DNA of 63,898 bases, counting the filler, from Salisapilia sapeloensis CBS 127946 (Eukaryota > Protista > Oomycota): NCBI GenBank assembly GCA_023334545.1. It is 15 parts of 15 records of this genome, joined end to end, with 100 filler letters (N's around TTAATTAATTAA, not from the genome) between each part and the next. Parts side by side here need not be neighbours in the genome. Positions count along the whole stretch, not along the records: positions 42,835 to 45,770 come from JAADVB010000812.1; 14 more parts are not named here. One strand, given 5' to 3'. The stretch's first letter is position 1; each line of letters starts with the position of its first letter. This document shows positions 42,835 through 45,770 of the stretch, in pieces. The notes beneath the pieces were generated by a model, which saw nothing but the letters and a program-made list of their open reading frames with translations, was not told the DNA's origin and ran no database searches. A program made the translations under genes and the position numbers.

Positions 42835-45770
42835 CTTTTAATTGACCAGCAGTGATCTAGCGTTGTAACAGCAACCAGCATTGGAATCGTAAATTTCAGC
42901 GTATTCAGAAAGCTCTCGCACGACATTTTTTTGTGATGCAAGCTTCTATTGCAAAACAAATAGCTTTGAGAAACGAAAATTTTATTTTTAACTACATATT
43001 TGCTTTATCGAATTTTCTACAGCTTTTTTAATGTCTATGTTAGTACAGCAGAAATTTTAAAAAATGTTTCGTCATTTTAATTGATTCGTCAAACACAAAT
43101 AAGTAATTAGGCATATTGTAAATTACATGTTTTTTAAAAACATAACGTGAATTTTGAAATATTGTATGCTTTATAGTACACTATTAAAATTCTTAAAAAC
43201 GACACACATAAAAGAGAAAAATTAGATTACATGTACTGAACTAATAACTTTACTTTGTATGCTAATACAACCAAAAAGAATTTCGTAAAAAAAAGTTTGC
43301 TATAAAAGTACATAAAATGATAAGGTTGGGAGTATCTTATGTTACTGTTTTAAGTGATAATAACTAAATTTGTAAAGTGTTCATAAAATATGTATAACAT
43401 ACACGAGGTTTTTATTTGTTTATAAAGAATGTATTTTTAAAGTGGTAAATGCATTGTGCTAAAACATAGTTGTAAACATGACTGATTTGGTACATAAAAT
43501 ACTGTAAACATTTTTAAACTATCGATATATCATTATAAAGCTATAAAAAGTATTTACATAGCAGTTGTTGTTATACATACTCTTTTACTATTTACAAAAT
43601 TAAAAAAAAATTTATACTTTAAAGCTTTTAATCTAAATAAAATAGCAAATTGCATTAAATATTTAAATAATGTTGTGTGATAGCTTTGACAAAGGCTCAA
43701 AGCAAAACATTTAAAGTTATAACGTAAATAACAGATGAATAAATAATAAAAAAGAATTCATGAGCAAAAGAAGGTCAGTACACTTTTTTTTTACATTTTG
43801 TGAACAATAAATGACTTTTAAATAAAAACTAACTTATAAAGTAGATAATACCTTTAAATTACAAACAGCATCACGCTAATATCTATGCATAATGAAAACA
43901 GTTACAACACGCAGCAACTATATGAACACTAATTGCCATTTTAAGACATTTTTAAATATAGTATTAGTTAAATTCTTACGTAATAAATGAATTCTTGTAC
44001 TGTGTATTTATTAAACACTTAGCAGTCATTTTTCATATCAGTTATCTACACATAAATTTGTTTAAATACAATTTACTCTTTTAAATTATTATGTATTTAC
44101 TGGTTTTTATCCTCTTTTTTGTAATAAAGTTTTATATAAAATATTTATATAAAACTTCAAAAAGTTTTTAAAATAAATAGCTTGAAAACATGTATGAATA
44201 TGCAACAAACAAAACTCGCACTATTAGCAAATTGAATATGTACTAGAATATATTAAAATATCATTTTTTATATAATTTAGTAGGTGTTTGTTATAAAAGA
44301 GCAAAATATTGTATAGCTCTACGAGTAAATTCAAACTTATCAAAATTTGGCAAACACTTGCTTTATATACTTTGAGTCACTCCTATATAGCACAAACAAT
44401 TTTATAATGTTAAGAAAAACAATATATATTTTATGTTAAACTGTGTTGTGTTTATAAAATCTATAACCGTAATGGTGCTAAAAACATAATTTGAATAGAA
44501 CAAAAACTAATATCTGTAGAACAGGTTTTACACTTTTCTTTATATACAACTATATGGGTTATATAATGTTTGATTAGCATACCGTTTTTATAACGCAAAT
44601 ATGTATACGTTGATAAATTATAAACAGCTTGAAAAGTTTACGTATAGATTTTTATTTCATAGAAAGTCATTATAGTATACAGCAATGTTAAATGTTTTTT
44701 TTAAATCGAAATTGTGCCGTAAAGTTATGATTAATAAAGCGTGTTTGTCTGCAAATTACTCTGCACGCACTAAAAGAACTTTTTAGCGTATTGAGTTGTT
44801 CTGAATATATAGAGCAACTTTACATTTAAAAGTTTTGTGTTTCTTTTACATTTGAGAATTAAAATAAAATTTGTATAATTTTAAACTTTATAAACTAGTT
44901 TTTTATAAAAGACCGATTTTAACTTAAACAATTGTATTTAAATGAAACAGAATACTGCTAGTTATAATAAGATGTAATGAATGACACACTGAGTTGCCTG
45001 CATTTGAAATACAGCTTTTAATTTCAGAAAAATACAAATTTATTAATGACTAGGTACGTAAGTTGTTTATATGCATGTTAGACAGATATGATAATTTTGT
45101 GTAAATTTAACGTAAAATGATGACAATAGCTGTTTTGTTTGTCTTTTTTTGGTTTTATTACAATACATTTTTTCTGAATGGTAGCAAAAAATTACATTAC
45201 CACTTTTAAACAAAATATTTGTATTCTACAGTTTTACACCAACTTTCTACTAAGCGATTTTTGTTAGCAAAATTATAAAAATTAATCATTATGTTGTTTT
45301 TATAACATAGGATTATATATATTAAATGCAAATTTTCTTCGTCACGCCACTGGTTCTCATATCAACATATTTTAAGTATGATCCATGCAAAAAATTAATC
45401 TATGATCAACTCAAGAGTTTAAAAATTTTTGTTGTCTAATTATCTTTATAGTGCTAAGACAAAAGATAATTTTCTAGACGAATTTAATTGTTTACGAAGC
45501 AGGATTTCACATATATGTTTTGTCTACAAAGAAATCAAGGTATGAGTGACAAATATGGTCAGACTAAAAATATAAAAAAGATATTATATATAATTCAATA
45601 CAGCGAGTATGTGGTTATAATATATTTTCCGTTTCTCAAAGCTATTTGTTTTGCAATAGAAGCTTGCATCACAAAAAAATGTCGTGCGAGAGCTTTCTGA
45701 ATACGCTGAAATTTACGATTCCAATGCTGGTTGCTGTTACAACGCTAGATCACTGCTGGTCAATTAAAAG
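42835..45770. mobile_element. AT-rich, ORF-less contig bounded by inverted repeats; probable eroded repeat/transposon relic
   Basis: 23% GC in 43021-43320; no ORF of 60 aa or more except inside the right arm; 42835-42975 = revcomp 45630-45770, with degenerate similarity continuing ~40 nt inward; no family motif recognised. Confidence 0.5.

What the first reader, a model, noticed from the sequence alone, without database searches (positions are those of the whole stretch)
42835..45770. AT-rich island with a YC (mainly CC/GG) erosion signature: candidate RIP-like defence with a novel context
Hand count of 43021-43320, both strands: 69 cytosines with 5' neighbour A 37, G 12, T 18, C 2; composition predicts about 27/8/27/8. 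CpA (17 of 34 top-strand C) and CpG (5) are not depleted. Ordinary intergenic 4861-4980 has 13 CC/GG in 120 nt. This differs from Neurospora-type RIP (CpA) and from CpG-5mC decay, and resembles C>T at 5'-YC (APOBEC3G-like CC deamination, CC-context methylation plus deamination, or unrepaired dipyrimidine damage). 5mC has been reported absent in Phytophthora, so a repeat-targeted process here would be new.
Basis: partly seen in the sequence, partly recalled or inferred. Interest (0 to 1): 0.85.

Follow-up and report, generated by a model that had tools for sequence, protein, structure and literature searches.

The report
AT-rich spacer inside a long inverted repeat
This short contig is a gene-free, AT-rich, single-copy stretch between the two arms of a long perfect inverted repeat; its shortage of CC/GG and TC/GA is real and fits cytosine loss that runs faster next to pyrimidines, but nothing shows a repeat-targeted defence.

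Summary
Across the whole 2,936-bp piece CC/GG is at half and GA/TC at 0.7 of expectation, GC is at 1.7-1.8, and CpA and CpG are not depleted. The bias is significant (|z| 4.5-6.5), uniform along the piece and strand-symmetric.

The object is not a demonstrated "island" and not a repeat. It is an entire contig whose ends are a perfect 141-nt inverted overlap. In the only public run that holds it, a 2,714-nt unitig (depth 29) is joined at both ends to one 3,043-nt unitig (depth 82). So it is a single-copy spacer of about 2.65 kb between identical inverted-repeat arms of at least 3 kb. It has no ORFs under 11 genetic codes, no Pfam, tRNA or Rfam matches, no tandem repeats, no sister copies at 80% or more, and no relatives in any collection searched.

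A forward model in which C>T is about 3-fold faster after a 5' pyrimidine, eroding 52% GC DNA to 24%, reproduces the profile close to sampling noise. YC-biased decay is therefore sufficient, but an ancestor or outgroup is lacking. Evidence for RIP-like targeting is negative: the only duplicated DNA is identical and less AT-rich than the unique spacer. Host, compartment and depth baseline could not be established.

The parts
42835..42975 (+). Left inner tip of a long inverted-repeat arm (141 nt, 36% GC). The arm continues at least 2.9 kb beyond the contig end.
   Evidence: It is a perfect reverse complement of 45630-45770 (152 nt at 98%). In run X1 a 3,043-nt unitig at depth 82.1 ends here at its positions 2903-3043 and fits both ends of the piece.
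42976..43035 (.). Possible eroded inward continuation of the repeat, about 55 nt. Not statistically significant.
   Evidence: The anchored alignment with the other end gives about 41 of 57 matches. The local score is 32 against shuffles of 27.2 +/- 2.9.
42976..45629 (.). Single-copy, non-coding, AT-rich spacer (2,654 nt, 23.6% GC) carrying the CC/GG- and TC/GA-poor, GC-rich dinucleotide profile.
   Evidence: A 2,714-nt unitig at depth 29.2 covers 42946-45659, with no other X1 contig at 80% or more. No ORF exceeds 70 aa, and no code out of 11 beats the shuffle expectation. No tRNA, Rfam or Pfam match. No tandem arrays.
45630..45770 (-). Right inner tip of the same inverted-repeat arm, in the opposite orientation.
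   Evidence: Perfect 141-nt reverse complement of 42835-42975. The same X1 unitig 'fits two places' of the piece.

Best explanation
The piece is the unique loop of a large inverted repeat. About 2.65 kb of gene-free, unconstrained AT-rich DNA lies between two identical arms of at least 3 kb. The contig was cut at the loop/arm branch points of the assembly graph, so its 141-nt 'terminal inverted repeat' is an assembler overlap and not the end of a mobile element. The unusual dinucleotide profile is best read as passive, neighbour-dependent cytosine decay in unconstrained DNA. In that reading C>T (G>A on the other strand) runs roughly 3 times faster when a pyrimidine precedes the C and slightly faster when one follows. 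GpC and RCR contexts therefore survive, while CC/GG and TC/GA are lost. Shown: the structure, single-copy status, absence of coding, the bias, and the sufficiency of the decay model. Inferred: that decay from a GC-richer ancestor actually happened, that it is untargeted, and that the DNA belongs to the sequenced organism.
For: Structure: perfect 141-nt inverted ends. X1 unitigs of 2,714 nt (depth 29.2) and 3,043 nt (depth 82.1) overlap by 30 nt at both ends. Non-coding. Bias real, uniform, strand-symmetric and purely dinucleotide-level. Surviving C contexts rank RCR (1.25-2.07) above RCY, YCR and YCY (0.18-0.73). Decay model with a=2, b=0.5: log2 rmsd 0.18 against sampling noise of 0.12 (maximum 0.19), r 0.93 on dinucleotides and 0.88 on trinucleotides; the context-free model gives r 0.26. 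The sequence occurs in one public run only, so it is not a common laboratory or host contaminant.
Against: No ancestor, outgroup or paralogue is available, so no substitution is polarised. A stationary native signature of another genome or compartment would look the same. The best model still over-predicts CG (1.24 against 0.90) and under-predicts CA/TG (1.05 against 1.23). The genome-wide dinucleotide profile and the nuclear and organellar depth baselines were not available. The arm:spacer depth ratio is 2.8, not 2. The 36% GC arm tip shows the same bias (CC/GG 0.30, GC 2.23), so the bias is not confined to the spacer.
Confidence: 0.5

Rival explanations
1. Mitochondrial DNA of the oomycete: a non-coding unique region between the arms of a mitochondrial inverted repeat. 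The composition would then simply be that of the organelle.
For: GC of 24-25% is close to oomycete mtDNA at 19-23.4% (PMC5093560). Inverted repeats occur in about a quarter of Peronosporaceae mitogenomes, and some are 20-33% non-coding with wholly non-coding repeats (PMC9020773). Perfectly homogenised arms and a contig break at the repeat/unique junction are typical of organelles. The P. ultimum small unique region is 2,711 bp (PMC2926784), against 2,654 nt here.
Against: There is no gene, tRNA or rRNA in 2.9 kb, whereas the Aphanomyces small single-copy region encodes nad11. Non-coding mtDNA there is 15.8% GC. K-mer depth is 29 and 82 in X1, against published mitochondrial depths of about 520 to 39,000, although no nuclear baseline was available.
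Confidence: 0.2
2. DNA of another, AT-rich organism co-sequenced with the target, carrying its own native dinucleotide signature.
For: A short orphan contig with no linkage to host genes. X1 assembles to only 23-24 Mb, against 85-88 Mb for the two sister runs of the study, so the sample's make-up is uncertain.
Against: It is found in a single public run, so it is not a common contaminant. It has no match in the phage, plasmid, viral, metagenome or prokaryote collections. It is gene-free, so not prokaryotic or viral.
Confidence: 0.15
3. One reading: a targeted cytosine-deaminating or RIP-like genome defence acting at 5'-YC on this locus in an organism without 5mC.
For: The YC-biased decay model fits. 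5mC and DNMTs are absent in P. infestans and P. sojae (PMC6211444). Oomycetes encode uncharacterised deaminase clades (PMC3239186).
Against: The eroded DNA is single copy with no family. The duplicated arms are identical and GC-richer than the spacer. The bias is strand-symmetric with no clustered asymmetry. CC-only and TC-only models fit poorly. No report of DNA hypermutation in oomycetes turned up.
Confidence: 0.07
4. Core of a small regional centromere of the inverted-repeat type: a unique AT-rich core flanked by homogenised inverted repeats.
For: The architecture matches: a unique, gene-free, AT-rich core of about 2.65 kb between identical arms of at least 3 kb. Short AT-rich centromeres are known in the stramenopile P. 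tricornutum (cited in PMC7082073).
Against: P. sojae centromeres are 115 to over 270 kb, GC-normal and Copia-like-transposon-rich (PMC7082073). There is no CENP-A, chromosome-count or flank information. No AT-rich motif or phasing was found.
Confidence: 0.07

Closest known systems
Neurospora-type repeat-induced point mutation (RIP)
   Same: Produces AT-rich, gene-free DNA through C>T transitions with a dinucleotide context bias.
   Different: RIP targets CpA, but here CpA O/E is 1.23. RIP acts on duplicated DNA and makes the copies diverge. Here the eroded part is single copy and the duplicated arms are identical and less AT-rich.
APOBEC3-type (TC/CC) or UV-type (dipyrimidine) C>T mutational footprints
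   Same: Deficit of C after a 5' pyrimidine, survival of RC and especially GpC. A 3-fold YC bias model fits the profile.
   Different: The footprint here is strand-symmetric and uniform, not clustered or strand-coordinated. Neither the CC-only nor the TC-only preference fits. No unedited reference copy is available. AID/APOBEC enzymes are not known in oomycetes.
Small unique region between the arms of oomycete mitochondrial inverted repeats (Pythium, Phytopythium, Aphanomyces, Saprolegnia)
   Same: Size (2.1-2.7 kb against 2.65 kb), low GC, perfectly identical long arms, and assembly breaking at the junction.
   Different: The known example encodes nad11, whereas this one has no gene at all. 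Depth is 29-82, not hundreds to thousands. Its GC is higher than reported for non-coding oomycete mtDNA.
Inverted-repeat regional centromeres (S. pombe cnt/imr, Candida tropicalis, Komagataella phaffii; recalled from my own knowledge)
   Same: A unique AT-rich core of a few kb flanked by kb-scale, near-identical inverted repeats, with no genes.
   Different: There is no functional or positional evidence. The only mapped oomycete centromeres are of an entirely different type.

Membership tests
RIP (Neurospora type) | Acts on duplicated sequence, so the mutated DNA is a repeat family | tested here: not met
   The spacer is one unitig at depth 29 with no other X1 contig at 80% or more. No internal repeat family.
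RIP (Neurospora type) | CpA>TpA preference (CpA/TpG depleted) | tested here: not met
   CA/TG O/E is 1.23, z +4.7.
RIP (Neurospora type) | Duplicated copies diverge by transitions | tested here: not met
   The arms are 141/141 identical and collapse into a single 3,043-nt unitig.
RIP (Neurospora type) | RID/DNMT-family cytosine methyltransferase in the genome | not testable with these tools
   The proteome is not available. The literature reports no 5mC methyltransferase in P. infestans or P. sojae (PMC6211444).
APOBEC-like ssDNA deaminase footprint | Depletion of the preferred target dinucleotide (TC and/or CC) | tested here: met
   TC/GA 0.68-0.71 and CC/GG 0.50-0.53.
APOBEC-like ssDNA deaminase footprint | Strand-coordinated, clustered C>T or G>A relative to an unedited copy | tested here: inconclusive
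   The bias is symmetric on both strands and uniform in six bins. No reference copy exists to call mutations.
Oomycete mtDNA unique region between inverted repeats | Flanked by long identical inverted-repeat arms; GC about 19-23% | tested here: met
   Arms of at least 3 kb. GC 23.6-25%.
Oomycete mtDNA unique region between inverted repeats | Carries mitochondrial genes (nad11 in Aphanomyces; mitogenomes 67-93% coding) | tested here: not met
   No ORF over 70 aa, no tRNA, Rfam or Pfam match.
Oomycete mtDNA unique region between inverted repeats | Read depth far above nuclear | tested here: inconclusive
   Depths are 29 and 82, and no nuclear baseline was obtainable.
TIR DNA transposon / MITE / foldback element | Terminal inverted repeats that end the element, target-site duplication, multiple copies | tested here: not met
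   The repeat continues at least 2.9 kb beyond the contig ends and the interior is single copy. Flanks are absent, so target-site duplication is untestable.
Inverted-repeat regional centromere | Unique AT-rich core between kb-scale inverted repeats | tested here: met
Inverted-repeat regional centromere | CENP-A occupancy; one locus per chromosome | not testable with these tools
   No ChIP data or chromosome-scale assembly is available.

The most novel reading that the evidence does not exclude
In an organism that lacks 5mC, a cytosine-deaminating activity with a 5'-pyrimidine preference has driven a specific nuclear locus from about 50% to 24% GC. The locus is the loop of a long hairpin-forming inverted repeat, which would be exposed as single-stranded DNA on cruciform or hairpin extrusion. 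That would make it a structure-targeted mutator rather than a duplication-targeted one.
Probability: 0.08. Interest if true: 0.8.

Novelty: new member of a known kind. Interest (0 to 1): 0.27.

Why it matters
If the YC-biased decay proved to be locus-targeted in an oomycete, it would be the first RIP-like or deaminase-like genome defence outside fungi and animals, and in a lineage without 5mC. As it stands the value is mostly cautionary. An orphan AT-rich contig with a striking dinucleotide skew turns out to be the loop of an assembly-collapsed inverted repeat. Its skew can be produced by a modest neighbour effect on ordinary cytosine decay. The structure itself, a gene-free AT-rich core between identical arms of at least 3 kb, is worth a look once the flanks are available.

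Tried and rejected
- Hidden coding: 11 genetic codes gave longest frames no better than shuffles. The 20 longest stop-free fragments gave nothing at Pfam curated cutoffs. No tRNA or Rfam family.
- Mobile element bounded by terminal inverted repeats: rejected, because the repeat continues at least 2.9 kb outward and the interior is single copy.
- Repeated motif or satellite as the source of the bias: no k-mer exceeds dinucleotide-preserving shuffles, no tandem arrays, no helical phasing.
- RIPCAL-style comparison of the two arms: impossible. They are identical for 141 nt and then only insignificantly similar.
- Relatives: none in phages or plasmids by blastn. None in viral, metagenome or prokaryote contigs by exact 26-33-mers of the arm. 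Both the arm tip and the whole piece occur in one run only.
- Record identity through exact-ORF look-up: not on record.
- Pure YC, CC-only or TC-only erosion without leak cannot reach 24% GC (floors at 26%, 40% and 35%) and over-shoot the bias.

Full report

The bias is not local. Symmetrised observed/expected ratios over the whole 2,936-bp piece are:

| Dinucleotide | O/E |
|---|---|
| CC/GG | 0.50 |
| GA/TC | 0.71 |
| GC | 1.81 |
| AC/GT | 1.18 |
| CA/TG | 1.23 |
| CG | 0.98 |
| TA | 0.91 |
| AA/TT | 1.12 |

Against mononucleotide shuffles of the 2,654-nt interior the deviations are strong: GA/TC z -6.5, AC/GT +5.1, AT -5.0, CA/TG +4.7, GC +4.6, CC/GG -4.5. They hold in each of six 490-nt bins and on each strand separately. 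Once dinucleotides are preserved in the shuffles, no 5- to 8-mer is enriched. G/C bases are not clustered either: there are 174 adjacent S-S pairs against 183 expected. They are simply redistributed from GG/CC (28 and 18) into GC (83), with CG at 45. Trinucleotide contexts of the surviving cytosines rank RCR (1.25-2.07) above RCY, YCR and YCY (0.18-0.73).

**What the object is.** The AT-rich DNA (25% GC) fills the whole piece, so an "island" in host DNA is not shown.
- The two ends are a perfect 141-nt inverted repeat that stops abruptly.
- Only one public run, X1, holds the sequence, and the same is true of the arm tip alone.
- In that run's contigs, a 2,714-nt unitig at depth 29.2 covers 42946-45659. 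A 3,043-nt unitig at depth 82.1 ends on 42835-42975 and fits both ends of the piece.
- The piece is therefore the unique loop, about 2.65 kb, between two arms of an inverted repeat that runs at least 2.9 kb further outward. The arms are identical enough to collapse into one unitig.
- The 141-nt "terminal repeat" is the overlap left where the assembly graph branches. From my own knowledge, 141 is the default largest k of MEGAHIT. It is not the terminus of a mobile element.
- The loop is single copy. No other X1 contig matches at 80% or more, and no variants are seen.

**Non-coding.**
- No ORF exceeds 70 aa, and none of 11 genetic codes gives a frame longer than shuffles do.
- There is no tRNA, no Rfam family at E up to 1 and no tandem array beyond one 31-nt trace.
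- None of the 20 longest stop-free fragments has a Pfam match at curated cutoffs.
- A weak 3-nt periodicity of G/C (z about 2.4) is the only hint of former coding.

**Relatives.** None were found: blastn against phages and plasmids; exact arm words in viral, metagenome and prokaryote contigs; exact-ORF look-ups.

With no ancestor or sister copy, a RIPCAL-type count is impossible. Beyond the 141 identical bases the arms are only insignificantly similar (score 32 against 27 +/- 3). I therefore ran forward models, eroding random 52% GC DNA by C>T (G>A on the other strand) to 23.6% GC.

| Model | Fit to the observed profile |
|---|---|
| Context-free | r about 0 to 0.26 |
| CC-only | r 0.66-0.74 |
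| TC-only | r 0.41-0.48 |
| YC about 3.3-fold faster than RC | r 0.91, log2 rmsd 0.22 |

These are; the 0.26 for the context-free model is. The YC model's two misfits are CT/AG (predicted up, observed flat) and CA/TG (predicted flat, observed up). Adding a weaker 3'-pyrimidine effect (3-fold after a 5' Y, 1.5-fold before a 3' Y) gives rmsd 0.18, r 0.93 on dinucleotides and r 0.88 on 32 trinucleotides. Pieces of 2,654 nt drawn from the model itself scatter by 0.12 on average and 0.19 at most.

A modest pyrimidine-neighbour effect on cytosine loss is therefore sufficient to explain the profile. Sufficiency is not proof, because a stationary native signature would look the same.

**Why a RIP-like defence is not supported.**
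- Repeat-induced processes mutate duplicated DNA and make the copies diverge.
- Here the eroded DNA is single copy.
- The only duplicated DNA, the arms, is identical and GC-richer (36%) than the loop (24%).
- CpA is enriched, not depleted.
- The bias is strand-symmetric and uniform rather than clustered.
[quoted passage not shown] Oomycetes carry several uncharacterised deaminase clades (PMC3239186). A search turned up no report of DNA hypermutation in oomycetes.

**Rivals for origin.**

*Mitochondrial DNA* is the most serious ordinary alternative.
- For: oomycete mtDNA is 19-23% GC. Inverted repeats are common. Some Phytophthora mitogenomes are 20-33% non-coding (PMC9020773). The small unique region of P. 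ultimum is 2,711 bp (PMC2926784).
- Against: the equivalent Aphanomyces region encodes nad11. Non-coding mtDNA there is 15.8% GC. Published mitochondrial depths are about 520 to 39,000 (PMC5093560). Here the depth is 29-82, with no gene at all.
- No nuclear depth baseline was obtainable, so this remains open.

*A foreign AT-rich organism* is possible, since X1 assembles to only 23-24 Mb against 85-88 Mb for its study-mates. A common contaminant is unlikely, because a single run holds the sequence.

*An inverted-repeat regional centromere* matches the architecture. It conflicts with the large, GC-normal, transposon-rich centromeres mapped in P. sojae (PMC7082073).

**Verdict.**
- The dinucleotide observation is real and well described by YC-biased cytosine decay.
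- The object is the single-copy, gene-free loop of a long, homogenised inverted repeat, cut out by the assembler.
- The claim of a repeat-targeted defence is unsupported, and partly contradicted.
- Compartment and host remain unresolved.
- Interest is modest until the arm, the flanks and the genome-wide background can be examined.

Noticed in passing
window 42835-42975 and 45630-45770: The inverted ends are perfect for exactly 141 nt and then break off. From my own knowledge, this equals the default largest k of MEGAHIT. Contigs in this assembly that appear to have 141-nt terminal repeats, direct or inverted, are likely graph overlaps and not biological termini.
   Followed up: partly
run X1 unitigs laid on 42835-45770: The arm:loop k-mer depth ratio is 82.1:29.2, or 2.8, not the 2.0 expected for two arms per loop. 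Either a third copy of the arm exists elsewhere, or the 24% GC loop is under-represented in the library.
   Followed up: no
runs X1, X2, X3 (same study): X1 assembles to 23-24 Mb in 20,473 contigs (longest 147 kb). The two sister runs give 85-88 Mb in over 200,000 contigs.
   Followed up: no
window 42976-45629: The loop length of 2,654 nt is within 2% of the 2,711-bp small unique region of the Pythium ultimum mitogenome (PMC2926784). Unlike the Aphanomyces counterpart, which encodes nad11, it contains no gene.
   Followed up: partly
window 44127-44157: A perfect 14-nt AT-only palindrome, AAGTTTTATATAAA / TTTATATAAAACTT, with a 3-nt loop, inside a wider imperfect palindrome at 44117-44154. In DNA this AT-rich it may be chance.
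   Followed up: no
window 42835-45770: Weak 3-nt periodicity of G/C positions (power 1.36 against shuffles of 0.77 +/- 0.25, z about 2.4), with no detectable protein similarity. It is either a faint trace of former coding or noise.
   Followed up: partly
window 42837-43004 (- strand): A 56-codon stop-free frame runs outward through the arm tip and off the contig end. It is too short to search, and it could be the start of a gene encoded in the arm or chance.
   Followed up: no
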